NCBI RefSeq assembly: GCF_963676685.1
Contig: NC_092352.1
Coordinates: forward strand, 3,968,001 to 4,032,000
Direction: 5' to 3'
DNA length: 64,000 bases
From: Mytilus edulis
Lineage: Eukaryota
Within the stretch, counting starts at the first letter, position 1. The number at the start of each line of letters is the position of its first letter. Shown here one piece after another: positions 13,342-61,200 of the stretch. The notes under the pieces were generated by a model. The model was given only the letters and a program-made list of their open reading frames with translations. It made no database searches and was not told where the DNA came from. The position numbers and the translations under genes were made by a program.

Positions 13342-14512
13342 TACAAACAACTTAACAATCAGACGGACCAATCATTGCAATAATGGCAGATTATACACTA
13401 ATTTACTAGCTATAATGACAATTAAGCAAGTTATCCGTCAAGACACAACCTATTTCACGAAATAAAGAACATACAAACTAAGTTTATTGTTCACCTAATT
13501 ACAAACTCATTCCAAACACAAATAATGGCTGTTCGAATGATCCCGTTTTGACCCAATTTCGAAAGACAATCGAAGTCATGTGATTACCAAATTAGGGTAT
13601 TTTTTGGACAATTTTTGTTCAACTGAGATCAGTTGGTTTCCTCTTAATGATCCTTTCAAATTCATTCAAAGCATGATTACACGTGTGTACCTGTCAGAAG
13701 TTCTACATTAAAGGTTATTTCTTTAACACTGTTTAAATAATTTGTTTTTATCGGTACTAACATTGAATTTGTTATTGATAAATTAAAACTAAACTAAATA
13801 AGTACTGCATCCTGTCGATATTTGTATTTTGGCATTTTACATGTTTTCTCATACTGTAGAAGACGTCTTTACATTAAATCCATTGGATATGTATTTATTG
13901 ATATATTTATGTCTGAGAAACATCATATAATGTTGTTAGTTGTAATTGGCTTTGAACTAGCTTTCTGTAACTCTAGGTACTTTTTGGTCGGTACGGTGTG
14001 TCTTTAGTCCTTTTTAATTGTTTTTGTACTTTGTGCCGACCTGATGGGTTAAAACTTAAAACTTTTCAACTGATTGTTTATAGTTTATTCTAATGGTACA
14101 CTGTTGAACCAGATAAAAGTAGGGCCGAGTGCTTCCAAACATGTTTAACGCCGCCAAATTATGTATATGATTGTCCTACGTTAGCAGCCTGTGATGTAGT
14201 GGTTTTCGTTGGTTGTTGTCCATCATATTTGTTTTTCGTTTATTGGTTTGTACATATGTTTGTTTTCTCGATTGAATGGTTTAACATTTTGTCATGTATG
14301 AGCCATTTTAGCTCACTGTATGTGGTGTGATTTTTGCTCATTATTGAAGTTCGTATGGTGACACAAAATTACTATCATCTACATTATTTGGTGTCTGGTG
14401 GAAAATTGTCTCATTGGCAACCATACCACATCTTTTTATTTTATATTGATATGATTATAAGCTTTGTTATGATTGCAGTGTGTGTTTTGTGGAGTGCAAT
14501 TTTGAAGTGCGG

Positions 14513-16935: not shown

Positions 16936-17279
16936 TTTTGTAACGACATTTCATCTAAAGTTGACGACATTAGTTGAACTTCCACAGCGGAATGTTCTAG
17001 AGTTATGTATTTCAGAAAGCGCTTTGTAGTTGTTAACACTTGATGTTAACATCTACAAAGCGCTTTCTGAAATACATAACTTGATGTTAACATCTACAAA
17101 GCGCTTTCTGAAATACATAACTTGATGTTAACATCTACAAAGCGCTTTCTGAAATACATAACTCTAGAACAAAAGTTGTTAACATCTACAAAGCGCTTTC
17201 TGAAATACATAACTCTAGAACATTCCGCTGTGGAAGTTCAACTAATGTCGTCAACTTCAGATGAAATTTCGTTACAAAA
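16936..17279. repeat. ~100-bp-arm inverted repeat enclosing three tandem 41-bp copies of its own arm
   Basis: Arms are 16936-17038 and 17177-17279. The unit TTGATGTTAACATCTACAAAGCGCTTTCTGAAATACATAAC occurs at 17040, 17081 and 17122. Confidence 0.92.
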
Positions 17280-17446: not shown

Positions 17447-20400
17447 TTAACAATGATTGCTATATTCTGTACCGTCTGCGGATATTTGAATACCAGTAGT
17501 GTTATACGTGCTAATGTCGTTATGATTGTACGTATACGAGTTTAAATCAACTGCCCCTCTTACAACCCCTTCAGCATGGTCATATGTACCAATGTCTGCA
17601 TTATTGTACGTCCCACAATTTGTTTTGACAGAAGCACGGAATTTTAAGTGATTATACTCTGTTTTGATTGATTCTTCGTCTCTGATGCTGATTTCATCAT
17701 AGTGACTCTCTCCTTTCCCGCTATCTATAGTATCAGAACTATTTACTTCTGTAGTTGTTTGTTTTCTGTACTCTACTTCTTCTTGCTCTTTGCTCTTTTG
17801 TCTAAAAAAAGTACAATTTCTTATCAGTTAAGTTATTGTTGGAAATGATTGACTCAGTAATTTATCAGTAAAATCAGTTACTTGAAGGGACACATACAAC
17901 ACATTAAATACGTTTTCAATCCTTTTTTTACTTGTAATCTATGTACGAAATACTTTAAAAAATATCAATGTTAAAATACAACGAAAATGAATAAAGCCAT
18001 TACAATATCAATTATAAAAATGACTTTGTGGTATGATTGCCAGTTAGACAACTAACCAACTTTATTCTAGGATTAAACGCCTTTTTAAAGAATTTATTAG
18101 TATCTAAACTTTACCAATTCATGCACAAACAAATAAAAGTCCAAACGATGATCGAACGCGATGAAAAGTAGTTCGGTCAACGTCGTCTATCGAAAAATAA
18201 ATAACGTCAAGAGTCACAACCAGCAGTCCTTTCGACCAATCATATAAACCAACATAATGCTCAAGCAAATCCCTGACCTAGACCCTGAGAATTATCCAAA
18301 AAAATTGTTTGACCTAATATCTTAAGACTTACCTCCGTCTTACAAATATTGCACTGACAATGACAATCACAATACATACCACAACACCAACTAGTATGTA
18401 AGGAAGTACTGTAAATATAAAGCATCAACATATTATCTCCATCACAAATCAAATTAAAACATTTAACACAATCTTCTTTGGTTGTTTTGCTTAGTTTTTT
18501 TTTGGTTAAAAATGTGTTAAACGCTTTCGGTAAAAAAAATCTATGGAAATGCAAAATGGATAAAGAAAAGTCGTCCTTCTAATAATTTAATCGTCCTGAA
18601 AATGCATTTTTATATTTGCCACTGGACGTACAGCAAAAATCAATCAATCATGCAATTTTCTTTCTATAAATTACCCAATGTCATTATTCTAATTGAAAGT
18701 CGAAAATAAACTGATAACCCCATGGGGAAAAAGAAAATAGACTATAAGATGAAAAATAGTAAAGAAAACGACAACTAGGCTGAGCAACACAAACTCGACC
18801 AGGTTGGCTCATGTCACGCTATAGAAGGGTAAGCAGATTCTTCTCCATATGTGGCGCCCGTCGTTTTGCTCATGTAAGTACACACCAGGTGTGATAAGTC
18901 TTACTCATTTAGGAAAAAGGAGGACGGGGATTGTAGTTTCAACGATTGGACGTTTCCATCGTCATCTGTATTCGAATGGATATATCATAACGGCCAACCA
19001 ACTCGTGATGGCGTCCATACATTTTTCGAAGGGATGATTTTAACTTGTAATCCTTGTTAGAGAAAAATAAAACACGTGCTATGTTATTTTACTTCTTTTC
19101 TGCGGTACTGTGAACTATCATTCTACGTTGGGATCCATAGCATACTCTCTTATACCGAATTGATTTTTTATTAAAAAACACTTAATGTCCAATACAAGAC
19201 TACTTAAAATATCTGTTAAAGTAGATATTGAACGAGTTTATATTTTTTGTTCTCACACGGTATACATACAATTCAAAAGAGTATCCCAGGAGATCAAAAA
19301 GGAAAATGTGGTTATTAAAATGAAGGCATGAAAAACTAAATACATAGGGAGTGTTTAATATAAAACGGCCAGAAGATGCTTAACCGCAAATTTCATCTTG
19401 GGTAACTTAGCTTGAATATCTTACATAATTTAAAAACCATAGACACGGAAATAAGTTCTTGTATAATAATTGTGTGACCACTGCATATAATGCATATAGT
19501 TATGGCGTTCCATATAATTATCTACATATGGCAGTCATGGCGTTCCATTGAACAAGCGTTCACTTCATTTTAAATACCATATAGCTGTCTTGATTACAAT
19601 TGAACCAGCGAAAAATTGCAACCATGGATACAAACTCTCCTTGGTAATCAATTTTATATACATGTTTGTATCTTACATTTGTTTTTTCTATTAAATTAAT
19701 AATGTTAAAACTTCCTGCCTTGATGGAGCTCATAATCTAAGTTATCCCTTCTATTCTAAAAATCGAGTCATATTTTAATCAATAATTTGAAACTTGGGAG
19801 TACCAAAATAAAATACCAGGGAACTTTTATGGAATGTTATGCAACTGTCATACAGTGAGAGGTTTAGCTAGCTATAAAACAAGGTTTAATTACATATTTT
19901 ACAGAAAGAAATGCTTGTACCAAGTCAGGTTTATGACAGTTATTTTTTTATTCGTTTGATGTGTTCGAGCTTCTGATTTTGGTATTTGAGAAGAGACTTT
20001 CCGTTTTGAAATTTCCATGGAGTTCTGTGTTTGTGTTATTTACTTTTTATAGCTGTCTCATGTAAAACATCAAATAAACTGTACGAAGCGACATACTTTG
20101 TAACACTTGTGATCTGTCATTTGTGGACTGGTTTACAGTATCTTCTTTAACATTTCCTGAAACCATCAATAACAAATTAGAATATTTCATTAGACTTATA
20201 ATAATATTTGATAAATGATTAAAAACAACACTGGTAGAGAAACCAGGACTACACTTAATATCGCCGTTCAAGTTACCATACAGTGACATTTATTCGCTTT
20301 CATTTATACACTAATACAATTCACAGTAAATAAAAAAAAAATGATCAATAATTATTGTTTTTAGATATTGTTTTGAGATATAGTTTGTAATTGTTCACTA

Positions 20401-23400
20401 GATGAAATGTATGGCGAATTTATCATACTGCATATGAAAACCATAGCACCAAAGCTTATTTGCGAAATCTTTCTGTATTTATTAGAGAAAAGAAACTAAT
20501 TCTTTCACTTTGGACTTACCTTTGCAGTCATATGATATCTCAGCATATGGTTTGAAAGTGTTCGAAGTACAAGTACCAGCTGGAAGTGCTCCTATCGCAG
20601 TATTATAAAACGTACAATTATTTTTATCCTGGCATATTTTCTTTAGAGCTGTACTAATAGCCGCACTACCATTGCATCGTCCCGGGAGTATAGATAAATC
20701 GGGACATTCATTGGTGTTAAATCGACCATAATGTACAACAATAATGTCAATGGACTGGTTTCCAACACATGATACAACTGCACTTTTATCAAAACAGACA
20801 CGAGTTGTGTTCAAACCTGTAAAAATTGAGTTGAACAATAACAAAACATTAAGTTAAAAAAACTACTTTAAATGTGGAAAAGAAATTGCTTGGATTGTCG
20901 TAACGAACAAACATTTGTCTGATAATAGTATGGTGTACCTTCTGAATTTTCAAAGACTACAACTTGTAGAAAATACAAGTGCATTCTTTTAAATTGAGGT
21001 CCATTTGGTTGTCCGACGAACATGAGATATATGGCAGGAAAGACTTAAGAGGGGGCGTAGCTAGAAAGAAACAATGTGGAAGCATGTACCACCGAGCGGA
21101 GCGAGGCGAAAAAATTTTGGGACCCTTTTATGCAGAAAAATGTTTTTTTTCGGTTTTCGGTCATAGGACGGTTTAAAGAGGCACTATATGTAGTCAGGAC
21201 TTAAAAATATGATTGTAAAACTATTAATAAATCTTCTGAATAGAGTAATACATAAACAACACATATTTGTGATACAGAATTTACTCAAAATCGTCAAAAA
21301 TCTTCTCTTTGGGTCTAGGCAGAAACAAACTTTTCTATTACTTTGTCAATATTCACACGGAAATACCGATGAATATGCAGTAACTGCATGTCGTTGTTCA
21401 TTGTTGATCGTACATTTGTTTTCAACATACGTAGTACACTGATAGATCTCAATGGTAGCACTCGCAAGATGTTATAAACCAGCGTACATGTTCGGCATCG
21501 AGCGAACTCCCAATTAAATTCGTCAAAATGACATGCCAGGTCAGTTTCGTATGTCTCAGACAATGTTGAGATTTGTTCGTCTGTTATATTTCCTACAACA
21601 CGATGAAGCAGATACAGCACAAAGAAGCGATTTTCTGATAATACTAGACGCGACTCCACTCTCCAGTTCCCTTATCATATGGTCTATGAACGCCAAAAAT
21701 AATGAGACTTTCCAATACTGTTTTGGCGTGTTTGCAGGGTGATTGGCTCCGGTAGTCTGCCGACCACATCGCCTCGGCATATTTCAATTATATCGAAGGG
21801 ACCTGATAATTCTAATGCCGATTGGTACATCTCATTCGAAACTGATGAACCGTACGCTGTAAAATGTGCTCCAAAACTACATGTCTTACATGTCTTAGAC
21901 TGAGTATTACAACAATCAAATCTTGTAAAATATACAAGTTACTGTCCGATTTTGCCATCATCTCCAATAAAACTTTTATTTTGAAACCAAATGCCGTTAT
22001 TTAATGATATTTCATCAATTAAAAAAGTGACAACATAGGTGTTTCCTTTAACATTAAATTTATAAATTTTTATTTTGCCATTATTATGATTATTATTTTT
22101 TTTGCATGCCGAATCGATGTGCACGCAACTGCGTGTTAGCGTATAGGGAGCTACGCGCCTGTATAATCCTATGATTCAGATGTTTCTAGTTGTGTGGTAG
22201 TTTGTTTTGTTTTAAGCAATTATCTCGTACATACAGTTGTTTTAGCAGATCATATGGGTGTTTAAGTTGTTGTAAGATGTTATTGGATCCAAGCCATTCG
22301 ATCCATCATTAAATAAACTCATATAAGATACCAGGACTAAATTTTGTATATACGCCAGACGCGCGTTTCGTCTACAAAAGACTCGTCAGTGACGCTCGAA
22401 TCCAAAAAAGTTAAAAAGGCCAAATAAAGTTCGAAGTTGAAAAGCATTAAGGACCAAAATTCATAAAAGTTATGCCTTAATGCACTGTTCTTCTTGTATG
22501 TCTTATTCGGTTTGGTACACTAATTCAGTTTTTTTTCTATTTTCAGCTTCACGTCTTCCCAGATAATTGATTACGTAGAGATTGGATTGTTATTGTTCTA
22601 TAATAATTTCTGTATTCTTGACCTTCCTTTTTGCTTTTATGCTTTGTCGGAATGCCTTTTTGTGTTTTTTCCTTACATGTGACGTTGTTCTGTACTTATA
22701 CTTCCAATCATTGTGTTATTGTGTCATCGTAAATGTTTGTTTATATATTTGTTTGATTTTATAGTGATTAAGATAATGTTGACTGTTGTATCCCAATTTG
22801 ACATTTTTACCTATTATGTGTGTTTGTTTTGTTCACGCGTCGTGGTCAATATAATGGAACTGTCATACACATGAGAGGTTAAGCTAGCTATAAAAACAGT
22901 TTTAATCCACCATTTTCTACATAAGAAAATGCCTGTCCATTTGTTTCAATTTGCCTGAGCTTTTGATAATGCCGTTTTATATAACGTAATTTAATGCGAC
23001 TATCATATAAGTGAGAGGTTTAGCGCTACAAAACCAGGTTCAATCCACCATTTTCTACATTTGAAAATGCCTGTACCAAGCCAGGAACATTGCAGTTGTT
23101 GTCCATTCGTTTGATGTGTTTGGCATTTGATTTTGCCATTTGATTGGGGACTTTACGATTGAATTTTCCTCAGAGTTCAGTAATTTTGTGATTTTACTTT
23201 TGACTATTTACTTTCTGTTTTGGATTTTTCTTGGAGTTCTGTGTGTTTGTGATTTTACCTTGTATTACAAAAAGTCCTATCAGAATTTTAAGTATGCTTA
23301 TGTTGTTTGAATATCGTTGTTAGACAATAAGCATGCTGTGTTGTTGTAATGTTTGAGTATAAATTGACTTTTGATGTGTTTAGCTTTTCAATATCAACTA

Positions 23401-23766: not shown

Positions 23767-25262
23767 CCTTTCACAACTCCAATGAATAGACTTATTTCAA
23801 CATGACGTTACACAACACGAAAACAAATATCTCGTACGAGTACTCGAGAGTTTAATGTTACTAAGAAAATGTACTTTCACGCAAAAAAACATATTTTTTC
23901 AATTCTTATTTTATGAAGTACTTGGAAAGGGTTTTATATAATTTAAAACAATGATGACATACAAAAGTTTAACGTAAAGCTGAATATGAATATGTTTTAT
24001 TTTGGTATCCGGTGATTAACACAAAGCTTCCGAGATCATATAACTTAAGGATCCTCGTGCGTACGTCAGAGTGTAGCACTTAAAGAGGACTTAGATGAGT
24101 TTTAACACAGAATAATATTCAAAATAATAAATAGAAATTAGTCAATATATAGTTTTTTTAAATAATTTGCCAATTAAAACCATGTGACCAATGGAGTAGT
24201 CAAATAGATGGTTCGAAAAACCTCGAAATTAATTGAATTTTTATTAACAAAACTCGTTATTAGCACGGTTGATATTGTTGACGTTTAGTTTTTCTCTTAA
24301 TTGAAGTTCTTCTAACCATTTGGTTATAAACAATGCTATAATGAATATTCCTTTTGGAAAAAAAATACTATATACTGTATACTATTTCTTCTAGTGGAAA
24401 TTATATTCTAGATTTGTTTCGTTCACTTGGAATTGATATTGTATAGATATTTCTGTTTCATGACAATATTATATTTCCAGATGATAACAAATGTATCATT
24501 CAATGAGAAAAAGGGAGAGCTTATTGTAATTCCAAAAGACGGGGAATTTACAATCTCATTCTAAGTACCACAATAAAAATAGTATTATTAAATATTCGTT
24601 ATACATATATTACTAAAACGGATTAATCTATAAAGTCCTATACTAAACTAGCTATTGCTCAAACACGAGCCTTCGCTCTAAATGAGACCCAATCACACAT
24701 CTTAACATAATCCTACCAAATAACAGAACCATAACATAAAGGTCACAATTATGCCGATCTTGTCAGTAAGGGACTTCCCGTCCGACAATAAATCCTTGCT
24801 GAAGTCGGTCGATTAAAATTGTTTAAATTTTTAGTACGATGCTTCATGCAGTGTCGCTCATTAAAAGTTAAAGAATATTTCTCTCTGGATATTGAGGCAA
24901 AATTATTGCCCATATCCAATATACCCTTATCATTCAAGTTACAGTCCATATGTCTGCTCGTCATACCATTCCACATATGTATCAGAATTTTCTTTTTAAA
25001 CTGTTTATTTGTTCCCGTCCTGAATATATATAGCAAACAATCAATCAAACAAAATATTTTTGATAAATTGTTGACCTTCATAACTTGCCGTCTGTCTAAA
25101 GAACACACATCTCCAGACAAATTTGGTCTTAAATTCGAAAACGGGTCTCCGATGTTCATATAAAAAGTAAAACTAAAATACTGAACTCCGAAGAAAATTC
25201 AAAACGGAAAGTTATAAATCAATAGGCAAAATCAAATGCTAAAACACATCAAACGAATAGAA

Positions 25263-25362
25263 AACTGTCATATTCCTGACTTGGTACAGGCATTGTTAAA
25301 TGTAGAAAATAGTGGATTGAACCTGGTTTTATAACGCTAAAACTCTTAGTTGCATGAAAGTC
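25263..25362 (-). ncRNA. Twister-like motif, partly degenerate
   Basis: The minus strand has AACCAGGTTCAATCCAC...GCCTG-TACCAAGT-CAGG-AATATGACAGT. The 5' half is mutated. Confidence 0.5.
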
Positions 25363-27555
25363 GCATCAATTTGCATTATATTTATAACGATGCCTGAACA
25401 AAAATATGTTTCTGACAACTGTTTAAAGCTTTTATTAATTAAAAAAAAACCATTCAATTTATAGTCAGTTTAAATCAAACACAACTCTTCAATCTATGGT
25501 TCAGTTTTTTAAAAGCATCATTTCGAACTTTAATTACCACCAAATAACATTACACTACATTTTACGGACAATTAAAGACCATTTTCTATATTGTAAATTC
25601 GAAAAATGAACAAAATGTGTATATCTCATTCAGACCCTCCTACTTGAGATCATATGCTACTTAGGTATACAAAGTTGTATTGTTCGGTTTTTCTTATTGT
25701 TATTCTCCTCTTTTTCTTCCTTCCTCTTCCGCCAATTTTTAAAATGAACATGTCTGCACCAAAACCTCTTGTATGATTTACTTAAGGTTGCACGATATGT
25801 AAGAGTCATATGTCAAAAGTACAATCAGGGGTGTATTTGTGCATTCGGGTATAAAGAGAGGTTCTTTGGGGGCCAAAGGTAGACGGGTTTACTATACTTT
25901 TTTTCCTTTATTTTTCAAATTATCATATTTTTAAAACAGTTAGTGATAGACACAATATTTATAATTGATAAATAGAGTTAGTACCCAGGAGTCACTTATG
26001 CATATTACTTAACTGAAACAAATTTTTCTGCACTTTACCCAATGTCCGCCGACCTTGGGATAAAATGTGATTATTGAAACTTTGCTTGGGATAATTCGTA
26101 AAGTTCAGCACCTTTTGACAATAATTTATTGTCAGTTTTGTCCTCTTGGTTATCATGTATTTGAGAATGAACACAAGTTAATTCATCATCGTGACATTCC
26201 ATTGCAATTCAATTAAGGTTTCAATACGAATTTTGTCTTTTCAAATCAAAGTCTCCAAGAGAAAAGGTGAAGAAATCTAACATAAATTGGTATGTAAAAT
26301 CTTTAATTACTTTTTAGCTCACCTGGCCCGAAGGGCCGAGTGAGCTTTTCTCATCACTTTGCGTCCGGCGTCGTCCGGCGTTAACTTTTACAAAAATCTT
26401 CTCCTCTGAAACTGCTGGGCCAGATTTAACCAAACTTGGCCACAATTATCATGCAGGTATCTAGTTTAAAAAATTTGTGGCGTGAACCGGCCAACCAACC
26501 ACGATGGCCGTCATGGCTAAAAATAGAACATAGGGGGTAAAATGTAGATTTTGGCTTATAACTCTGATACCAAAGCATTTAGAGCAAATCTGACATGGGG
26601 TAAATAAAGTAGTATACCGCTGTTCAAACTCATAAATATATGGACAAAAAACAAAATCGGGGTAACAAACTAAATCTGAGGGAAACACACCAAACATAAG
26701 AGGAGAACAACGACACAACACTACAATGTAACACACACAGAAACGGATAAAATTGTTTCTCAGATGAAGATCTATCTGCCCTGAAATTTTCAGACAAATC
26801 TGACAACCAGTTGTTGGGTTGCTGCCCCTGAATTTGCAATTTTAAGGAAATTATACCGTTTTTTGGCTATTATCTTGAATATTATTATAGATAGAGATGA
26901 ACTGTAAACATCAATAATGTTCAGGAAAGTAAGATCTACAAAAAAGTGAATATAGCTAAAATGGTCAGTTGACCCCTTATGGAGTTATTGCCCTATGTAT
27001 TAATTTTTTACCAATTTTCGTAATTTTTTGTAATCTTTTACAAAAATCTTCTCCTCTTAAACTACTGGTCCAAGTTAAAAAGTTATTGTGAAACTGCCTA
27101 TTCTAGAGGTGGCGTGAATCAGATGTGGATACTTAAAAATTCCAAAGATCTTTTAGAGTACATACAATCTAACTCTCTTTCATCTTGTAACAGTATTAAA
27201 ACATTTGACTTCTCTACTCTTTACACAAGTATTCCACATTCCAAACTTAAAGACAAATTAAAAGAGTTGGTATTACTTTGCTTCATAAAAAAGAATGGCC
27301 AACGTAGATACAAGTATCTTGTCTTAGGGAGGGATAAATCCTACTTTGTAAAGAATCACTCTGATTCAAACAAAAAATTCTCTGAAACCGATATTATCAA
27401 GATGCTTGATTTCTTGATTGACAACATATTTGTTACGTTCGGAGGACGTGTTTTTCAACAGACTGTCGGCATACCAATGGGAACAAACTGTGCCCCTCTA
27501 CTTGCTGACTTGTTTCTTTATTATTATGAGGCTGACTTCATGCAGGAACTTCTTA

Positions 27556-28418
27556 ACATTTTGTTCATTTTTCGAATTTACAATATAGAAAATGGTCTTT
27601 AATTTCCTGTAATTAGTTAATACTTCAGCTTTATCATGTACATCTTTTGAATATTCATTTTATTAAATTTACTGTTTGCAAAAGTATAAATTACTCTAGA
27701 TTATAGGGATTTTCTGGTAACTTAACGGAAAACCCTTGCCGTTTTTGGCACAACCTTTTTGATCTTTTGGTCCTCGATGCTGTTCAACTTTGTACTCGTT
27801 TCGGCTTTCAAACTTTTGTATCTGTGCGTCACACATAGGTCTTGTGTGGACAAAATACACTTCTGGCGTATTAAAATTTTGAACTTGTTGCCTTTTGTTG
27901 GCTGTTGTTCGTGTGATTCTTTGTCAATTGTGTTCTCCAATTTATTTATATTGTAGTCCTGTGTTGTCATTTTGATGTTATATTTCACATGGCCATAAAA
28001 GTGCGAGGTTTGGCATGCCACAAAACCAGGTTCAACCCACCATTTTTTCCTTTAAAAATGCCCTGTACCAAGTCAGGAATATGGTCATTGTTATATTATA
28101 GTTCGTTTCTGTGTGTATTACATTATAACGTTGTGTCGTTTGTTTTCTCTTATTTTTGAGTGTAAATTCACATTGCGATAAGACGTGTCACGGTACTTGT
28201 CTATCCCAAATTCATGTATTTGGTTTTGATGTTATATATATATGTTATATTTGTTATTCTCGTGGGATTTTGTCTATATGTGTTACATTTTAGTGTTATG
28301 TCGTTGTTCTCCTCTTATATTTAATGCGTTTCCCTCGGTTTTAGTTTGTTATCCCGATTTTGTTTTTTGTCCATGGATTTATGAGTTTTGAACAGCGGTA
28401 TACTACTGTTGCCTTTAT
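27556..28418 (+). mobile_element. Non-autonomous retro-repeat inserted in the RT gene (degenerate hammerhead module, twister motif, tail)
   Basis: Interrupts ...GAACTTCTTA|GGAAGAAAG..., with TTA at both junctions (27553-27555, 28419-28421). Confidence 0.75.
27989..28088 (+). ncRNA. Twister-like motif, P5-type permutation
   Basis: Closing stem ATGGCCATA/TATGGTCAT; AAAAGTGC-GA-GGT; hairpin TGGCATGCCA; CAA-CCC-ACC; P3 ATTTTT/AAAAAT; CCTG-TACCAAGT-CAGG. Confidence 0.65.
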
Positions 28419-30272
28419 TTAGGAAGAAAGATAAGAAGTTAGCAATATCCTTTAACTCTACTTTCCGCTATATAGATGACGTTCTTTCACTAAACAATTC
28501 AAAATTTGGTGACTATGTGGAACGCATCTATCCCATCGAATTGGAGATAAAGGATACTACAGATACAGTTAAGTCAGCTTCATATCTTGACTTACATCTA
28601 GAAATTGACAATGAGGGTCGGTTGAAGACAAAACTTTACGACAAAAGAGATGATTTCAGCTTTCCAATTGTGAACTTTCCATTTCTAAGTAGCAACATTC
28701 CAGCAGCACCTGCATACGGGGTATATATCTCTCAATTGATACGATATTCCCGTGCTTGCATTTCCTATCATGATTTTCTTGATAGAGGGTTACTGCTCAC
28801 AAGGAAGCTATTAAATCAAGAGTTCCAAATGGTGAAGTTGAAATCATCCCTTCGTAAATTTTACGGACGCCATCACGAGTTGGTTGACCGTTATGGAATA
28901 ACCATTTCACAAATGATATCGGATATGTTCCTCACGTCGTAACTACAATCCCCTTCCCTTTCATGAATTTGACCTACCGAATTAGACTATTTACCGGATT
29001 TGTAATCACATAAGCAACACGACGGGTGCCGCATGTGGAGCAGGATCTGCTTACCCTTCCGGAGCACCTGAGATCACCCCTAGTTTTTGGTGGGGTTCGT
29101 GTTGTTTATTCTTTAGTTTTCTATGTTGTGTCATGTGTACTATTGTTTTTCTGTTTGTCTTTTTTATTTTTAGCCATGGCGTTGTCAGTTTGTTTTAGAT
29201 TTATGAGTTTGACTGTCCCTTTGGTATCTTTCGTCCCTCTTTTAAACCATACTTGGCCATAATCATCATTGAGGTATATTGTTTAAAAAATGTGTCCGGT
29301 GACCCTGCCAACCAACCAAGATGGTCGTCATGGCTAAAAATAGCACATAGGGGTAAAATGTAGATTTTGGCTTATAACTCTGAAACTAAAGCATTAAGAG
29401 CAATTCAGACATGGGGGTTAAATTGTTTTGAAAGTCATGATCTATTTGCCCTGACATTTACAGATGAATCCGACAACCGGTTGTTGGGTTGCTGCCCCTG
29501 AATTGGTAACTTTTAATAACTGATAATTTTCAGTAAATACAGTAAATTTAAAATACTGATAACCGATAACAGTAATTTCATTTATCTGACAGAAGACAGA
29601 AAACACTCAATTAAAAAAAAACTAAAAAAAAAAAACAGAAGTCAAGGACAATTAATTTCATAACAATGTCAATTTAAAAAACAACAGATAATAGCTTATT
29701 ATTCAATTATATGTAACAGTTAACATGACATGTATTTTCAACAGTTAACAAAAGTTAGAAAATGTTTTTAAACATCTTAACAGAAAAGATCGTGCCGCCT
29801 CCCTCATAAAAGTATTTCTATTGGAATTATCATAATAATTTCAAATGAGAGGGATCTTTTAATTATTTTTCGCAGTATTCCTATACATGGACTTAATGTA
29901 CTAACTGTTAATATAGAATGTCCTTGTCCTATATGAATCGGAAAAAATGAAAATAGGTATGCTACCAAAATAAAAATAATAATAATAACAAAACCCCATT
30001 ATTTCCTAACACAGATTTTCAAATATCTGTGTTCGTATTGACATTTGAAGACAGATATAATTAGTTATCAATAATTCCAGTATCTACTAGTATATCTTTA
30101 CTTATTAGAAAATATTCATCGATTCTTTAACTCACCTGATTGGTTTCCTAGGTAACGAATTCTTCGATATGTGATGTACCTGGTTGTAATGACAATCAAG
30201 TTAATAGATATATAGGTTAGTCACTTAGTCAGACGGAAAAACAATGTCAGTGCTGTTATATCCAGGAAAACT

Positions 30273-36869: not shown

Positions 36870-37760
36870 TGGGAGTATGCATAGGAATGTAGGCTATTGA
36901 GTGACAGAACATCATATTTCTGAAAGTGAAATAAAAGAACAACTAATACTTTTTGCTTTTGAGACATTAAAGAACCAACAGACACGGCTTCCTCCGCCTC
37001 ATTTTAGACATACCTCGAATTTGACATACACAGTCATCGTACCAGAATCTATGATAAACGAGACGATTTTAATTTTGAAATGATCAATTTCCCTCACCTT
37101 TGTAGTAGCAATATACCAACTTCATCTGGATATGGGTTTACTTTCACAACTTATTCGGTTTTCAGAGCTTGCAGCTCCTACTCAGACTTTGGAAAATGTC
37201 ACCAGTTTGTAAGAAGAAACTTGATAAACCATGGGTATGTCAAAGAACGTCTCGTCCTTTTTCTAAAAAAGTTCATCGGAAGGTAGCAAGACCTTGTTGA
37301 TAAATATTCCGTAACAACTTCAGAAATACTACACGATGGTCATGAAGTATATATTCTTGGTATTGACGTTGTTTGTCATCTTAATAACGTGTTGTTATTC
37401 TTTTATTTGTCTTTATTGATATTACTTTTAATGTTAAGTCTGGGTTTTTTTTGTGTTATTCATTTGACGTGGCTCTGTACTTATATATCCCGTCAATGTA
37501 TTATTGTTCTATGATTTCTTTTGTTGTTTTTCATTTTTTTGCTAATATGCTTTTTCTGTATGTCTTTTGTGTTTCTTGGTTAAATATGACGTGGCTTTGT
37601 ATATATACATCCCGCCATTGTGTTATTGTGTCATGGTAAATGTTTGTTATATATCTGTTTGTTTTAAAGTGATTAAGATAATACAACATTGACTGATATA
37701 CCCCTATTTTTGACATTTATACTTATTATGTATGTTTGTTTGTTCATACATCGTAGTAAA
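36870..37760 (+). mobile_element. PLE family 2 degenerate RT C-terminus plus 3' UTR
   Basis: Frameshifted RIYDKRDDFNFEMINFPHL.SSNIPTS...YSVFRACSSYSDF...LKKFIGR. The UTR at ~37450-37760 matches ~22660-22855, which continues into the twister motif. Confidence 0.75.
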
Positions 37761-50239: not shown

Positions 50240-51066
50240 GTGATTGTTTGTTTTTATCAGCTTATCTCATTAGATTAATTAGTCAAAAGTAAAAGACTTC
50301 TTTTGATAACTGTTCATAATGCTAAAATATTCTGGATTTTTTCTATACAACTAGTGTATCATATATATCTTAGTTTTACTTTACTATTATTGTATCATGT
50401 ATCTTGGTTTCACTATATATACAACTAGTGTATCATATGCATGTATTTTGGTTTTACCATACAACTAGTGTATCATGTACATGTATCTTAGTTTTACTAT
50501 CAAACTAGTATGTAGCTATTTTACTAAATTTTCCTTTGATCTTAATGACTGATAATTTTCTATCTCAGCTCAGTACAGTGATATGAAAAAATATCACTAG
50601 AAACTCAGTGCATACTTGCTGTTGTCATTGAAATTAACAAAGTCATCATACATTGTAGGTAAAATGCCTGTCCCAAGTCAGGAGCCTATAATTCAGTGGT
50701 TGTTGTTTGTTTATGTGTTACATATTTGTTTTTTGTTCATGTTTTTATATAAATAAGGCCGTTAGTTTTCTCGTTTGAATTGTTTTACATTGTCTTATCA
50801 GGGCCTTTTATAGCTGACTATGCAGTATGGGTTTTGGTCATTGTTGAAGGCTGTACGGTGACCTATAGTTGTTTATGTCTGTGTCATTTTGGTCTCTTGT
50901 GGACAGTTGTCTCATTGGCAATCATACCACATCTTATTTTTATATAGATTATCATTGGACATGTATCTTAACTTTATTGCTTTTCTCACTTTTGCCTCAC
51001 TGACTCAAGCTAGAAAATCAATCTCAATGAGATGATCAATGATAATCTAATATAGTACATGTATCA

Positions 51067-58200: not shown

Positions 58201-61200
58201 TGTGGCATGTGCCACACTTTGAGAAAATGTTGTATGATCAAGGACAGTTGTTGGTGGCTTATGCCACAGCCTATCAGGTATGTATACTAGAAAGAAGAAA
58301 AAATAATTGTTAAATATGTACCTTTTATCAGGTTGTCTGCATTTCTTTGGAAATAGAGAAAAAAAATTGAGTCTTGCAAAGTTTTTCTCCTGTTTTTGTA
58401 GCTAGAACAAATAAATTTAATATTCATACAAGGTACAAATATTATGTTTATTCTGCAATTTAACATTTATGCTTAAATCTTTAATTTTTAACTACCCAAC
58501 CATTGAATTTGTTTCTAAGTGACTAACATGCAGACTACTATACACAATACTTGATTAATTGTGACATTTACAGTGACTTAAGGTTTAATTTGTTTCACAG
58601 AGCTATGGTCATGGATAATTCTTTTTGTACAAAGTCAGATTTTAATCAATTTGTATTTTTAATTCAAAATGCTGAATTACAATATGAGTTATCTATCTTG
58701 GTGCATAATATGATAAGAAGACGTCGCGCTCTGAAAAGTAATCTACAGTCTTAATTGTATATTTTCGTAAGAGTCAAAGTTTTTTTAATTTATTTATTTT
58801 TTAATTCATGATTGTATATATCTGTAAAAGTCAGTTACAGTTATTTTTTTTTTTTTTATTTATTTTTTTTTTAATTCATTTCAATCATATTCTTTTTATT
58901 GACTATTTTACTGAGAGGGTTTTAATAAAACAAGATTACTGCGTTTTATTCTTCGCAATCTGTTTATATAACCTCTTTAAAATATATTCTTTTTATCACA
59001 TATCATTAATTTTTTATGTCATACTTAATTTTGTCATATCTATTTTTAAAAAGACATTTTTTTTTTTTTTTTTTTTTAACTACTTACAAATTATGTTAAT
59101 ATATTTTTTTTTATGATGTGTAATATCCGGATAATTTTAAACATTTATAACATTTTATTATGTTTTTATTTTGTATTTGTTAAATAGATATAAATTTGTA
59201 TATATAGTGTCTCATAAGCCTTTCTAGGCTGGGTATTTGTCTTATTTTATTATTGTGCAATGTATATTATATAAACTGTATAAATAATCTGTAGACAAGT
59301 ATGTGACACTCTTAATAAAATAAATTATTATTTACTATAACAACCCCTTATTTTTGTTATATATATTTGAATCACAGATAAATCTGTTAAAAACTTTATT
59401 AAGGGGATCTGTTTAATTTGAATGCTTTAAAAATTTGTAATTTAAAACAGAAAGATGAATTTGATTACAGATAACTAAAGATGAAACGTTTGCTGATGTT
59501 GCCAGAGATATAGTGGAATATGTGACTAGAGATTTACAAAGTCCTGTAAGTTAATTAAAAAATTCCTGTAGATATAATAATAATGAGATGTGGTATGAAT
59601 ACCAATGAGACAACTATCCCAGAGAGTACAAATGTCTTGGATTTAATTAGGTATACGTTACAGTTCATCCTTCAACAATGAGAAATCTGAAACTGTATAG
59701 TGAGTCATAAAAGGCCTTTACATGCCAAAATGTGAATCGAATGAACATAGAAATTCAACAACCAGATTTATGACAAAAAAAAACCCAAAACCTCTATGAC
59801 AGACAGCAACCAATGACAGCCACTAGATGGAGACCCACATGAAAGAAGCAGTGTTTAACATGTTTATTAAACATCATGAACATATAGCTAATAAAATTGA
59901 GAAAGGAAATAGGGAATGTTTCAAAGCGACAACAACCAGACCATAGAGCAGACAACAGCCGAAGGCCAACAAAGGGTCTTCAATGTAGCGAGAAACTCCC
60001 GCACCCTTAGGTGTCCTTTAGCTGGCCCCTTAAAAAATATGTATACTAGTACAGTGATAATGAACGTCATACTAAACTCTGAATTATTCACAAGAAACTT
60101 AAATTAAAAAATCATACAAGACTAACAAAGGCCAGAGGCTCCTGACATGGGACAGGCTCAAAATTGTGGTGGGGTTAAAATTGTTTATGAGATCTCAACC
60201 CTCCCCCTATACCTCTAGTCAATGTAGAAAAGTAAACGCATAACAATACGCACATTACAATTCAGTTCAAGAGAAGTCCGAGCTAGCTAAGCTAAGTATA
60301 TATGTTTGCAGTCAAAAACATAATTATTAAATGAGCTTTTTGAAATAAGTTGTAATAATGTGTATTACAAATAATAATAATTCTGCTAATAATGATGGAT
60401 ATTATTAACAAGTCAATGAAAACTGAGATCTTTGTAAATGTTAAAATATTTAATATAATCAATTTTGTAGAATTAGATATTAAAAAATACCTCTGAAAAA
60501 CAGATAAAAAAAATCATATCTTAGTATTTGCAAGATGTTCTTTTCTACAACCAAATTCTTTTTTTTCTCAGGAAGGTGGGTTTTATAGTGCAGAAGATGC
60601 TGATTCCTACCCAGTAGATGACACTTCAGAGAAAAAAGAAGGTGCCTTCTGTGTTTGGACCTATGAGGAGATACAGTCTCTTCTGAAGGAACCAGTAGAA
60701 GATAAACCAGACATTAAAATGGCTGACATATTTTGTTTTCATTACGATATTAAAGAGGATGGGAATGTTGATCCAATGCAGGTAGATATAATAAGTTCTC
60801 TGAAAACTAATTAATTAATGACACACATAAACATATCTATAACCTATGCTACAAATCAATGCAGAGCAGAGGAGGGCCGCTAATCACTTCAAATTAGCAA
60901 GGCTTGATAAAAAAAAAATTGTACTGTTTTTCCAACTCTTAGTCCATCAGATTTTCAGCCCTTTTGGGATTCTGTAAGCTTATAAAAAAATTATTTATAT
61001 TTGATCACAGTTGTACTTATTCATATGATATAATGTGAAGAAAAGATTTACATGATAAGTTATATAGATGATTGTATATTGCAAAATTGGATAGTGTAGC
61101 TTTTGCACTAGCTGTGTATATTATGTACTGTGTTCTTTTTTTTCTCTTTTATTTATTTACTATTCTCATTATTAATTCAAGTTATGAAAGAAAAACCACA

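What the first reader, a model, noticed from the sequence alone, without database searches (positions are those of the whole stretch)
60132..60218. Circularly permuted (P5-type) twister-ribozyme fold conserved with covariation across different repeat families
Seen: several repeat tails with unrelated flanks share one ~90-105 nt architecture (60132-60218 -, 22996-23099 +, 27989-28088 +, 19843-19941 +, 25263-25362 -; partial at 22858 and 50664, degenerate near 14110). The closing stem covaries (CTAGAGG/CCTCTGG, ATGGCCATA/TATGGTCAT, AACTGTCATA/TATGACAGTT). The L4 loop covaries with its distal partner (TCCC with GA-GGG, TACC with GA-GGT). P4 is CCTG/CAGG, and L2 ACC can pair with the loop's terminal GT. 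Established, from memory: the twister consensus is UAA-P2-GCC-[P3]-G-CCGG-UCCCAAGC-CCGG-A-[P5]-P2'-GA-GGG, with pseudoknots T1 and T2. The motif matches this opened at P5. Inference: these are self-cleaving twister variants that act as a processing module of mussel retro-repeats. I do not know of this being described for these families.
Basis: partly seen in the sequence, partly recalled or inferred. Interest (0 to 1): 0.9.

Follow-up and report, generated by a model that had tools for sequence, protein, structure and literature searches.

The report
Twister-type ribozyme fold in mussel retroelements
A roughly 91-100 base RNA fold with the helices, pseudoknots and core letters of a circularly permuted (type P5) twister self-cleaving ribozyme sits in the 3' part of very abundant mussel Penelope-like (probably Naiad-type) retroelements, a group reported to lack ribozymes, and in short repeats built around it; cutting itself is not shown.

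Summary
A model built from natural copies finds every stated site in the window and nothing comparable elsewhere. The window holds three element families, not five: a decayed, 5'-truncated F1 copy (60130-60220, minus strand), four copies of a ~240-bp element (C-type), and one 819-bp element (D-type), plus fragments.

Well-preserved F1 copies elsewhere in the genome align end to end with Rfam Twister-P5 (23.4 bits, E 0.0033). That is below the gathering score of 37.6. P5, P3, P2 and pseudoknot T1 show changes on both sides between families. The core letters GA, GGG and UAA stay fixed, and loop L4 changes only where its T1/T2 partner changes.

P1 is missing. Two self-complementary tracts stand in its place; the first keeps its symmetry while its letters change.

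F1 follows the end of a reverse-transcriptase ORF and a SECIS element. That fits Naiad Penelope-like elements, which are reported to lack hammerheads (PMC8557442).

Self-cleavage is not shown. Raw RNA reads show no pile-up of ends at the predicted U^A, and genomic copies do not start preferentially there.

Other windows of this genome gave the same reading earlier in this scan. I found no paper describing it. Verdict: a real, probably selected twister-class fold and a new variant of a known kind.

The parts
59891..60282 (-). 5'-truncated, decayed copy of the F1 element. F1 is the 3' region of a Penelope-like, probably Naiad-type, retroelement.
   Evidence: BLAST of L042 against the window: 90.6% identity over 392 bp, ending at the family's common 3' end.
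60130..60220 (-). Twister-like module, F1 copy, 91 nt. This is the finding itself.
   Evidence: R1 gives 100.5 bits; sequence read. Compared with well-preserved copies it has one broken P3 pair, L4 A>T, L2 G>A and a damaged second palindrome.
60211..60220 (-). P5, 5' strand. It pairs with 60130-60139.
   Evidence: 8-10 bp closing stem.
60199..60207 (-). P2 3' strand GGGG (60204-60207), then G-A with the candidate catalytic G (60202-60203), then the T1 strand GGG (60199-60201).
   Evidence: Same register as the Rfam Twister-P5 alignment of copy L042. T1 pairs counted.
60178..60198 (-). Stretch that stands where P1 should be: two short self-complementary tracts.
   Evidence: In L042 the Rfam model skips the homologous 21 nt by a local end. 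In a well-preserved copy (L039) the monomer fold is 0.0 kcal/mol and the dimer -15.4 kcal/mol.
60171..60177 (-). Predicted cleavage site U^AA (cut between 60177 and 60176), followed by the P2 5' strand CCCC (60171-60174).
   Evidence: Alignment to Twister-P5. Cleavage is inferred, not observed.
60141..60170 (-). L2 (60169-60170), P3 hairpin (60157-60168), then P4-L4-P4' (60141-60156).
60130..60139 (-). P5, 3' strand.
27603..28421 (+). D-type non-autonomous retroelement, 819 bp. It carries a dead hammerhead relic at about 27820-27866 and the module at 27989-28088.
   Evidence: 30 loci match at 92-100% identity, with a common 3' end at about 28421 and varied 5' truncations. Sequence.
27989..28088 (+). 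Twister-like module, D family. T1 is ACC/GGT, P5 is 9 bp, P3 is 7 bp, P2 is weak.
   Evidence: R1 gives 23.2 bits. At least 40 copies are 100% identical. No Rfam hit.
19829..20049 (+). C-type ~240-bp element; module at 19843-19941 (decayed).
22979..23201 (+). C-type element; module at 22996-23099.
22848..22936 (+). Partial C-type copy, cut off inside L4.
25161..25393 (-). C-type element; module at 25263-25362.
50651..50693 (+). 5'-truncated F2-type copy that keeps only P4-L4 and the P5 3' strand.
14110..14191 (+). Degenerate F-type module.
   Evidence: R1 gives 15.4 bits.

Best explanation
The module is a genuine twister-class RNA fold in the type-P5 circular permutation. It is carried on the sense strand of Penelope-like (probably Naiad-type) retroelements, between the reverse-transcriptase stop codon (plus SECIS) and the 3' end. 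Short non-autonomous elements, the ~240-bp C-type and the 819-bp D-type, are built around the same module.

Shown here:
- Helices P2, P3, P4 and P5 and pseudoknots T1 and T2 can form.
- P5, P3, P2 and T1 are kept through changes on both sides between families.
- The letters that make the twister active site are kept: G-A before GGG, U/C^AA before P2, the L4 sequence, and the A after P4.

Inferred: the RNA cuts itself between U/C and A just 5' of P2. It would then play in these elements the still unexplained role that the hammerhead plays in the pseudo-LTRs of other Penelope-like elements.

Helix P1 is replaced by two self-complementary tracts that do not fold stably on their own but pair well between two molecules. 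So activity, if any, is likely weak in a monomer and may need two copies to pair, as happens with the minimal hammerheads of Penelope-like elements.

My odds: about 0.85 that this is a selected twister-class fold, and about 0.55 that well-preserved F-type copies cleave in vitro.
For: Match to the known family:
- Rfam Twister-P5 aligns over positions 1-58 of 58 to L042:1451-1517, at E 0.0033 in the targeted search. P2', GAGGG, UAA, P2, GC and P4-L4 fall in the expected order.
- An F2 copy matches the P3-P4-L4 part of twister-P1.

Covariation, on 36 distinct natural copies:
- 92.3% of cells are paired, against 81.2% in shuffles.
- 17 of 27 pairs change on both sides.
- The covariation score is 0.336, against 0.171 in shuffles (0 of 500 reach it) and at most 0.054 when partners are slid by 1-3 columns.
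- T1 and T2 were not part of the model that made the alignment. T1 still shows GC>UA in 6 rows, and T2 shows GU>AU in 8.

Stems differ between families: four different P5 stems of 9-10 bp and three different P3 stems.

Between families, similarity is confined to the module.

The motif lies on the sense strand of elements that have a fixed 3' end and varied 5' truncations.

Context fits Naiads. The ORF end is the C-terminal part of a reverse transcriptase with no endonuclease after it, and a SECIS scores 41.4 bits. Naiads dominate bivalve genomes and were reported to lack hammerheads (PMC8557442).

Clear type-P1 retroelement twisters in metagenome contigs carry the identical P4-L4 18-mer. They also fall below Rfam's gathering score, at 50-55 bits against 67.2.

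The palindromic tracts pair far better between two molecules: 0.0 against -15.4 kcal/mol, and -1.1 against -19.2 kcal/mol.
Against: - No cleavage is observed. In raw RNA reads, depth is flat across the predicted site and no position shows a pile-up of molecule ends. That test would only see about 20% or more cleaved molecules, and many reads run on into sequence flanking the element's 3' end.
- Copies that begin exactly at A(+1) are no more frequent than copies beginning 1-4 nt away.
- P1 is absent.
- Rfam scores are below gathering, and there is no hit at all for the window's own copies or in a genome-wide look that scored only 79 candidates.
- The last letter of L4 is U instead of C, so one T2 pair is G.U.
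- In the young, highly successful D family P2 keeps only 2 of 4 pairs.
- The N-terminal endonuclease that defines Naiads was not seen here.
Confidence: 0.6

Rival explanations
1. The fold is real and selected but no longer cuts, or never did. It would serve as a structured recognition, dimerisation or packaging signal for the element's reverse transcriptase. The twister-like tertiary fold and the two palindromes would be kept for binding and RNA-RNA pairing.
For: No ends at the predicted site in RNA reads. No excess of copies starting there. P1 is missing and replaced by palindromes that favour intermolecular duplexes. D-type copies with a weak P2 still multiplied to many identical copies. Non-autonomous elements keep the module, as expected for a signal needed in trans.
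Against: Every letter of the twister active site is kept across families that are otherwise unalignable. A binding site would not need exactly these letters. A related Penelope-like family in the window (28484-29245) has no such module in its 3' region, so the module is not a general requirement of the enzyme family.
Confidence: 0.25
2. The module is a relic. An ancestral element once carried a twister, and the sequence persists in recent families by descent and rapid amplification, without present function.
For: Many copies are very young, so identity within a family says nothing about selection: at least 40 D copies are 100% identical. Between the two F1 subfamilies the module (96.7% identity) is hardly better kept than the 190 nt upstream of it (95.3%).
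Against: Between families only the module is alignable. Changes in P5, P3, P2 and T1 are compensatory. Neutral decay does not produce that.
Confidence: 0.1
3. The resemblance to twister is coincidental. The module would be something else: an internal polymerase III promoter (the GGTTCAATCC stretch looks like a B box) or the inverted ends of a tiny DNA transposon.
For: C and D types contain a B-box-like GGTTCAATCC stretch. The closing stem could be read as terminal inverted repeats.
Against: ARAGORN finds no tRNA-like gene in the window. The B-box-like stretch is absent from F-type copies. The module always lies inside larger elements with retroelement-type 5' truncation. The full-length alignment to Twister-P5 and the T1/T2 partner changes are not expected by chance.
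Confidence: 0.03

Closest known systems
Twister ribozyme, type P5 permutation (Rfam RF02684; Roth et al. 2014, cited from my own knowledge and via PMC10085705)
   Same: Same order of elements: P5 - P2' - GAGGG - [P1 region of about 20 nt] - UAA - P2 - GC - P3 - P4 - 8-nt L4 - P4' - A - P5'. T1 (CCC with GGG) and T2 can form. Full-length model alignment.
   Different: No P1 helix; two palindromic tracts stand in its place. L4 ends in U, so T2 has a G.U pair. The P4 third pair is U-A. The score is under Rfam's gathering threshold. It sits in tens of thousands of animal retroelement copies. Cleavage is untested.
Twister and 'T-variant' ribozymes at the 5' end of RTE-type non-LTR retrotransposons (Perere-3 of Schistosoma mansoni, PMC8501958; remark in PMC7761336)
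   Same: Twister-class motif carried by a retroelement. The type-P1 examples I found in metagenome contigs have the identical GCCUGUCCCAAGCCAGGA core.
   Different: Those are type P1 and lie at the element's 5' end, and copies begin at the cleavage site (upstream flanks diverge there). The mussel motif is type P5, lies in the 3' region after the ORF, and copies do not begin at the site.
Hammerhead ribozymes in the pseudo-LTRs of Penelope-like elements, including minimal forms that cleave as dimers (reviewed in PMC6765202; Cervera and de la Pena 2014; Lunse et al. 2016)
   Same: Same kind of host element and same place (3' region, which becomes the pseudo-LTR). A helix that would close the ribozyme is replaced by self-complementary sequence, which suggests pairing of two copies.
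   Different: A different ribozyme class. Naiads were reported to lack canonical hammerheads (PMC8557442). Dimer dependence is only inferred here.
Retrozymes of Mytilus galloprovincialis: hammerhead-bearing non-autonomous elements that give circular RNAs (PMC7229834)
   Same: Short non-autonomous mussel repeats with a ribozyme motif, sometimes in tandem. C-type cores occur at about 205-bp spacing. The D-type element even keeps a dead hammerhead relic upstream of the module.
   Different: Those carry a hammerhead, not a twister. No circular RNA evidence was obtained here.

Membership tests
Twister ribozyme (type P5) | P4 hairpin with an 8-nt loop L4 of consensus UCCCAAGC | tested here: met
   CCUG/CAGG with UCCCAAGU (F types) or UACCAAGU (C and D types). 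P4 pairs form in 98.6% of cells.
Twister ribozyme (type P5) | Pseudoknot T1: three L4 letters pair with GGG of the GAGGG strand | tested here: met
   93.8% of cells are paired. The third pair is G-C in 24 rows and U-A in 6, a change on both sides. T1 was not part of the model that made the alignment.
Twister ribozyme (type P5) | Pseudoknot T2: the last two L4 letters pair with GC of L2 | tested here: met
   93.1% of cells are paired. The pairs are G.U plus C-G in F types and A-U plus C-G in C and D types, so only one side changes. This is weaker than the canonical two G-C pairs.
Twister ribozyme (type P5) | P2 helix flanked by N^AA on its 5' strand and by G-A-GGG after its 3' strand (cleavage site and catalytic G) | tested here: met
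   F types: GGGG/CCCC with UAA and GAGGG. C type: three pairs with one bulged U. D type: only 2 of 4 pairs. The G-A, GG and AA letters are kept in the well-preserved copies of every family.
Twister ribozyme (type P5) | P5 as the open, closing helix, and P3 as an optional hairpin | tested here: met
   P5 is 9-10 bp in F1, C and D and split in F2; 8 of 10 pairs change on both sides. P3: 3 of 4 pairs change on both sides.
Twister ribozyme (type P5) | [quoted passage not shown] | tested here: not met
   The Rfam alignment skips the 21 nt by a local end. The stretch has no stable fold of its own (0.0 kcal/mol) and consists of two palindromic tracts. P1 is known to be partly dispensable (PMC8501958).
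Twister ribozyme (type P5) | Rfam curated gathering score | tested here: not met
   23.4 bits against 37.6 for the best copy. No hit at E<=10 for the window's copies. Clear type-P1 retroelement twisters also fall short, at 50-55 bits against 67.2.
Twister ribozyme (type P5) | Site-specific self-cleavage | tested here: inconclusive
   No pile-up of ends and no dip in depth at L042:1481/1482 in raw RNA reads. The test is insensitive below about 20% cleaved, and many reads run on into sequence flanking the element's 3' end. A bench assay was not possible.
Naiad clade of Penelope-like elements | Reverse transcriptase at the C-terminus of the ORF, with no endonuclease after it | tested here: met
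   The ORF L057:469-1125 is homologous to protein fragments in which RVT_1 lies just upstream (P0098). It ends without a GIY-YIG match. Atlas neighbours carry HTH_animal and RVT_1.
Naiad clade of Penelope-like elements | N-terminal GIY-YIG endonuclease with CxC linker; DKA motif | not tested
   No locus reached far enough upstream.
Naiad clade of Penelope-like elements | No canonical hammerhead; very high copy number in bivalves; SECIS after the stop codon in some families | tested here: met
   No hammerhead inside the F1 element in L057, L048 or L043. SECIS_1 scores 41.4 bits about 50 nt after the stop. About 18,000 core motifs. Literature: PMC8557442.

The most novel reading that the evidence does not exclude
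Naiad Penelope-like elements, thought to be the ribozyme-less branch, use a P1-less type-P5 twister that becomes active only when two copies pair through the two palindromes. It would be the functional counterpart of the dimeric hammerheads of other Penelope-like elements. The ~240-bp C-type repeats in ~205-bp tandem arrays would be twister-based retrozymes, cut to unit length and circularised.
Probability: 0.3. Interest if true: 0.85.

Novelty: new variant of a known kind. Interest (0 to 1): 0.72.

Why it matters
Canonical endonuclease-bearing Penelope-like elements carry a hammerhead ribozyme whose role is still unknown. Naiads, the clade that dominates bivalve genomes, were reported to do without one, and that was taken to mean the ribozyme is dispensable or parasitic.

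A conserved twister fold in the same place would mean the ribozyme slot is kept but filled by another class. That argues for a real function and gives a second, independent system in which to find it.

It would also add tens of thousands of animal examples of the rare type-P5 twister. It would provide a natural P1-less, possibly dimer-dependent twister variant for structural work. And it would flag about 27,000 potential cleavage sites scattered through mussel transcripts.

Tried and rejected
- Rfam scans of the whole window and of the two best window copies found no twister hit. This is explained by decay (F copy) and divergence (D copy), since a well-preserved F1 copy does hit.
- RF02684 over the whole genome found nothing, but only 79 of about 31,000 candidates were scored, so it is uninformative.
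Pattern output is cut at 80 letters, so no genome-wide family census was possible.
- tRNA or SINE-head reading: ARAGORN found nothing.
- Pfam on the 218-aa ORF found nothing significant.
- RNA reads show no sign of cleavage. This is reported as no support, not as evidence of inactivity.
- Test for copies starting at the cleavage site. F1: about 8-9 of the first 100 of 275 matches, against about 5-6 of 55 and about 9-12 of the first 100 of 150 at boundaries 2-3 nt away. C type: about 4 of 100 of 386 against about 13 of 100 of 233 one nt upstream. There is no sharp peak.
- The metagenome scan for cross-species type-P5 copies returned mostly type-P1 retroelement twisters. Only two decayed type-P5-like copies turned up (L061, L114), too damaged to add covariation.
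- The downstream region of the RT-like ORFs at 28484-28918 and 37008-37340 in the window has no module.
- Roth et al. 2014 is not held in the library.
Full report
**What is at the stated coordinates.** On the minus strand, 60220-60130 reads as follows:
- a 10-nt strand that pairs with the last 10 nt (P5);
- ATA, GGGG, GA, GGG;
- 21 nt made of two near-palindromes;
- TAA, CCCC, AC;
- a short hairpin;
- CCTG, an 8-nt loop TCCCATGT, CAGG, A;
- the closing strand.

I built a covariance model (R1) from ten natural F1 copies, giving it only the nested helices P5, P2, P3 and P4. The next hits score 13.6 bits or less and are noise.

**How many families.** The copies at 19843, 22858 (partial), 22996 and 25263 belong to one short element of about 240 bp. 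It has a defined 5' end about 33 nt before the module and a 105-nt tail.

27989-28088 lies inside an 819-bp element (27603-28421). That element has very many near-identical copies, a common 3' end and varied 5' truncations, which are the marks of reverse transcription from the 3' end.

The copy at 60130-60220 is part of a 392-bp, 5'-truncated copy (59891-60282) of a longer element that I call F1. 50651-50693 is a truncated copy of a sister family (F2), and 14110-14191 is a wreck.

So the window shows three families plus fragments. The flanks of the four C-type copies are homologous, not unrelated. Between families, however, similarity is confined to the module. That is the important point.

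**Abundance.** The 19-mer spanning P4-L4 occurs about 18,000 times with CCC in the loop and about 9,200 times with ACC. The reversed control pattern gives no hit.

**Is it a twister?** The window's own copies do not reach any Rfam twister model even at E<=10. The F copy is decayed, though. Better-preserved genomic copies of the same family have GCC where it has ACC (most simply CpG decay), an intact P3 (CGCA/TGCG) and the loop TCCCAAGT.

One such copy, L042, aligns with Rfam Twister-P5 over all 58 model positions at 23.4 bits, E 0.0033 in a search of 161 nt against all 4227 families. An F2 copy matches the P3-P4-L4 part of twister-P1.

The score is under Rfam's gathering value (37.6). That threshold is severe for retroelement twisters. 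Metagenome contigs that carry the identical P4-L4 18-mer are plain type-P1 twisters with all helices present, and they also stay under their family's threshold, at 50-55 bits against 67.2.

A table of published Schistosoma twisters (PMC8501958) shows the same blocks: UAA, P2, GC, P3, P4, GUCCCAAGC, P4', linker, P2', GAGGG.

**Covariation.** R1 was used to align 42 matches (36 distinct natural copies) from the window and the loci. I added T1 and T2, which the model does not contain, and counted pairs.

| Measure | Observed | Shuffled | Partners slid 1-3 columns |
|---|---|---|---|
| Cells paired | 92.3% | 81.2% | 33-46% |
| Covariation score | 0.336 | 0.171 (0 of 500 reach observed) | at most 0.054 |

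17 of 27 pairs have changes on both sides.

Per helix:
- P5: 8 of 10 pairs change on both sides. Four unrelated stems of 9-10 bp are seen.
- P3: 3 of 4 pairs change on both sides.
- P2: all 4 pairs change on both sides.
- T1: the third pair is G-C in 24 rows and U-A in 6.
- T2: G.U in 24 rows and A-U in 8.
- P4: does not vary.

Two caveats apply. The alignment is fitted to the nested helices. The rows are related copies, so the independent events are few: essentially the splits between F1, F2, C, D and two or three minor families.

The minimum-energy folds of the sense strand give P5, P3 and P4 in all four families. For F1 and D the antisense strand folds no better than shuffled sequence; for C it also folds better than shuffles.

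**What does not fit.** P1 is absent. After GGG comes one U, then a self-complementary tract whose letters differ between families: GAGATCTC, GGGATCCC, TGGCATGCCA, TAGCGCTA, TAGCTAGCTA, GGTACC and GGCGCC. Then comes YAA, a second tract (AACATGTT or AACCAGGTT), then the U/C-AA that abuts P2.

On its own this stretch has no stable fold (0.0 kcal/mol in F1). Two copies pair well: -15.4 kcal/mol in F1 and -19.2 in D.

In the C type, P2 is three pairs with a bulged U. In the D type only 2 of 4 pairs remain, although D is the youngest and most uniform family.

**Host element.** In longer F1 copies the module lies about 310 nt after the stop of an ORF and about 235 nt before the 3' end. The 218 residues available are homologous to thousands of protein fragments. 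In one of them (P0098) a weak RVT_1 match lies directly upstream. Atlas neighbours carry HTH_animal plus RVT_1 and come from molluscs, cnidarians and rotifers. No endonuclease domain follows.

About 50 nt after the stop there is a SECIS element, at 41.4 bits against a gathering score of 35.

Craig et al. 2021 (PMC8557442) describe this combination for Naiads:
- reverse transcriptase at the C-terminus;
- tens of thousands of copies in bivalves including Mytilus;
- SECIS right after the stop in some clam families;
- no canonical hammerhead, unlike other endonuclease-bearing Penelope-like elements.

The word 'twister' does not occur in that paper. I could not see the N-terminal endonuclease, so 'Naiad' remains probable, not proven.

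A related RT-bearing family in the window (28484-29245) has no module in its 3' region. The module is therefore family-specific.

**Does it cut?** I laid the one available raw RNA-seq run (X24) on L042:1100-1800.
- Both orientations are covered.
- Depth is highest over the module and flat across the predicted site (bins 1460-1483 and 1484-1507).
- No position qualifies as a place where many molecules begin or end.
- Many reads (182 at position 1762) run on past the element's 3' end into unrelated flanks. A large part of the signal therefore probably comes from copies embedded in other transcripts, many of them decayed.

The test would only detect roughly 20% or more cleaved molecules. It gives no support for efficient cleavage, but it does not exclude weak or conditional cleavage.

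I then asked whether truncated genomic copies begin at the predicted A(+1), as Perere-3 copies do in Schistosoma and as the type-P1 metagenome examples do. My estimates of copies with unrelated sequence directly upstream of each boundary:

| Family | Boundary | Unrelated upstream |
|---|---|---|
| F1 | at the site | about 8-9 of the first 100 of 275 |
| F1 | 2 nt downstream | about 5-6 of 55 |
| F1 | 3 nt upstream | about 9-12 of the first 100 of 150 |
| C type | at the site | about 4 of 100 of 386 |
| C type | 1 nt upstream | about 13 of 100 of 233 |

There is no sharp peak. Cleaved RNA is therefore not a preferred template, which also fits a motif placed in the 3' region.

**Most likely mechanism.**

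Shown: a twister-class fold, permuted at P5, kept by compensatory changes in the sense RNA of Penelope-like elements and their non-autonomous derivatives.

Inferred: it cuts at U/C^A next to P2, weakly as a monomer because P1 is missing, and better when the palindromes of two copies pair. Two such copies are present in one transcript when the element sits in the partial tandems (pseudo-LTRs) typical of this group. This mirrors the minimal, dimer-active hammerheads of other Penelope-like elements (reviewed in PMC6765202). Its role would be the same unsolved one as theirs.

The chief rival is that the fold is kept as an RNA-protein or RNA-RNA recognition signal without catalysis.

**Literature and earlier notes.** Searches for twister together with Mytilus, mollusc, retrotransposon, Penelope-like or Naiad found no description of this motif. 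Known related cases are type-P1 and T-variant twisters at the 5' end of RTE elements (PMC8501958; remark in PMC7761336).

The scan's own notes show that other windows of this same genome gave the same reading (twister P5 fold in Naiad tails, P1 replaced by palindromes) before me. These are unchecked AI notes and not independent evidence. I reached the Naiad link from the SECIS hit and the paper before reading them.

New here:
- the RNA-read test;
- the copy-start test;
- the comparison with type-P1 retroelement twisters sharing the same P4-L4;
- the anatomy of the C and D derivatives in this window.

All analyses used natural copies.

Noticed in passing
window 22352-22395 (-): Canonical type I hammerhead ribozyme, 34.5 bits (gathering score 34). 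It lies about 450 bp from the C-type copies but on the other strand. Three more stand in locus L048 at about 367-bp spacing, typical of mussel retrozyme or Penelope-type repeats.
   Followed up: partly
window 27820-27866 (+): Hammerhead relic inside the 819-bp D element, in the same orientation as the twister-like module. The helix I arms are kept but both core boxes are mutated (CTGACGAG to CACATAGG, GACGAAAC to GACAAAAT). Rfam does not detect it.
   Followed up: partly
L048:1177-1241, L043:1775-1839 (-), L057:1177-1241: SECIS element (41.4, 33.9 and 24.9 bits; gathering score 35) about 50 nt after the stop of the reverse-transcriptase ORF of the F1 element. This suggests a selenoprotein-encoding Naiad family in a mussel.
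   Followed up: partly
window 16996-17086: Near-perfect 90-nt hairpin that matches several unrelated miRNA precursor models on both strands, all below gathering. It is most likely a MITE-type inverted repeat.
   Followed up: no
G000:C1:5262282-5262714 and C1:8879680-8879901: C-type cores repeated at 203-207-bp spacing, that is, tandem arrays of the short element. This is a possible substrate for unit-length, ribozyme-processed RNAs.
   Followed up: no
G000:C1:6000972-6001126: 40-80-bp repeats in which the loop letters CCAAG are joined directly to TAATCCACC. It is a mini-array made of the 3' half of the module only.
   Followed up: no
many places, e.g. G000:C3:26229466, C5:68627610, C3:97645891: Recurrent deletion variants that remove exactly the second palindrome, or both palindromes, of the P1 region. 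They probably arise by slippage between the two YAA repeats.
   Followed up: no
L062-L180 (metagenome contigs Ga0056*, Ga0126*, Ga0209*): More than 100 type-P1 twisters with the same P4-L4 as the mussel motif. Each stands at the start of a repeat whose upstream flank diverges at the cleavage site. This is the retroelement 5'-end arrangement known from Schistosoma, here in host DNA of another invertebrate sample.
   Followed up: partly
L042:1473-1552 (RNA run X24): Nine reads carry a variant that joins AACCCC directly to TGGCC. It lacks L2, P3, P4 and part of P5, and is an expressed deletion copy.
   Followed up: no
window 28484-29245 (+): A 5'-truncated copy of another RT-bearing family abuts the 3' end of the D element. 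Its 3' region has no twister-like module but shares the CCATGG...TTTATGAGTTT tail motif with the D element.
   Followed up: partly
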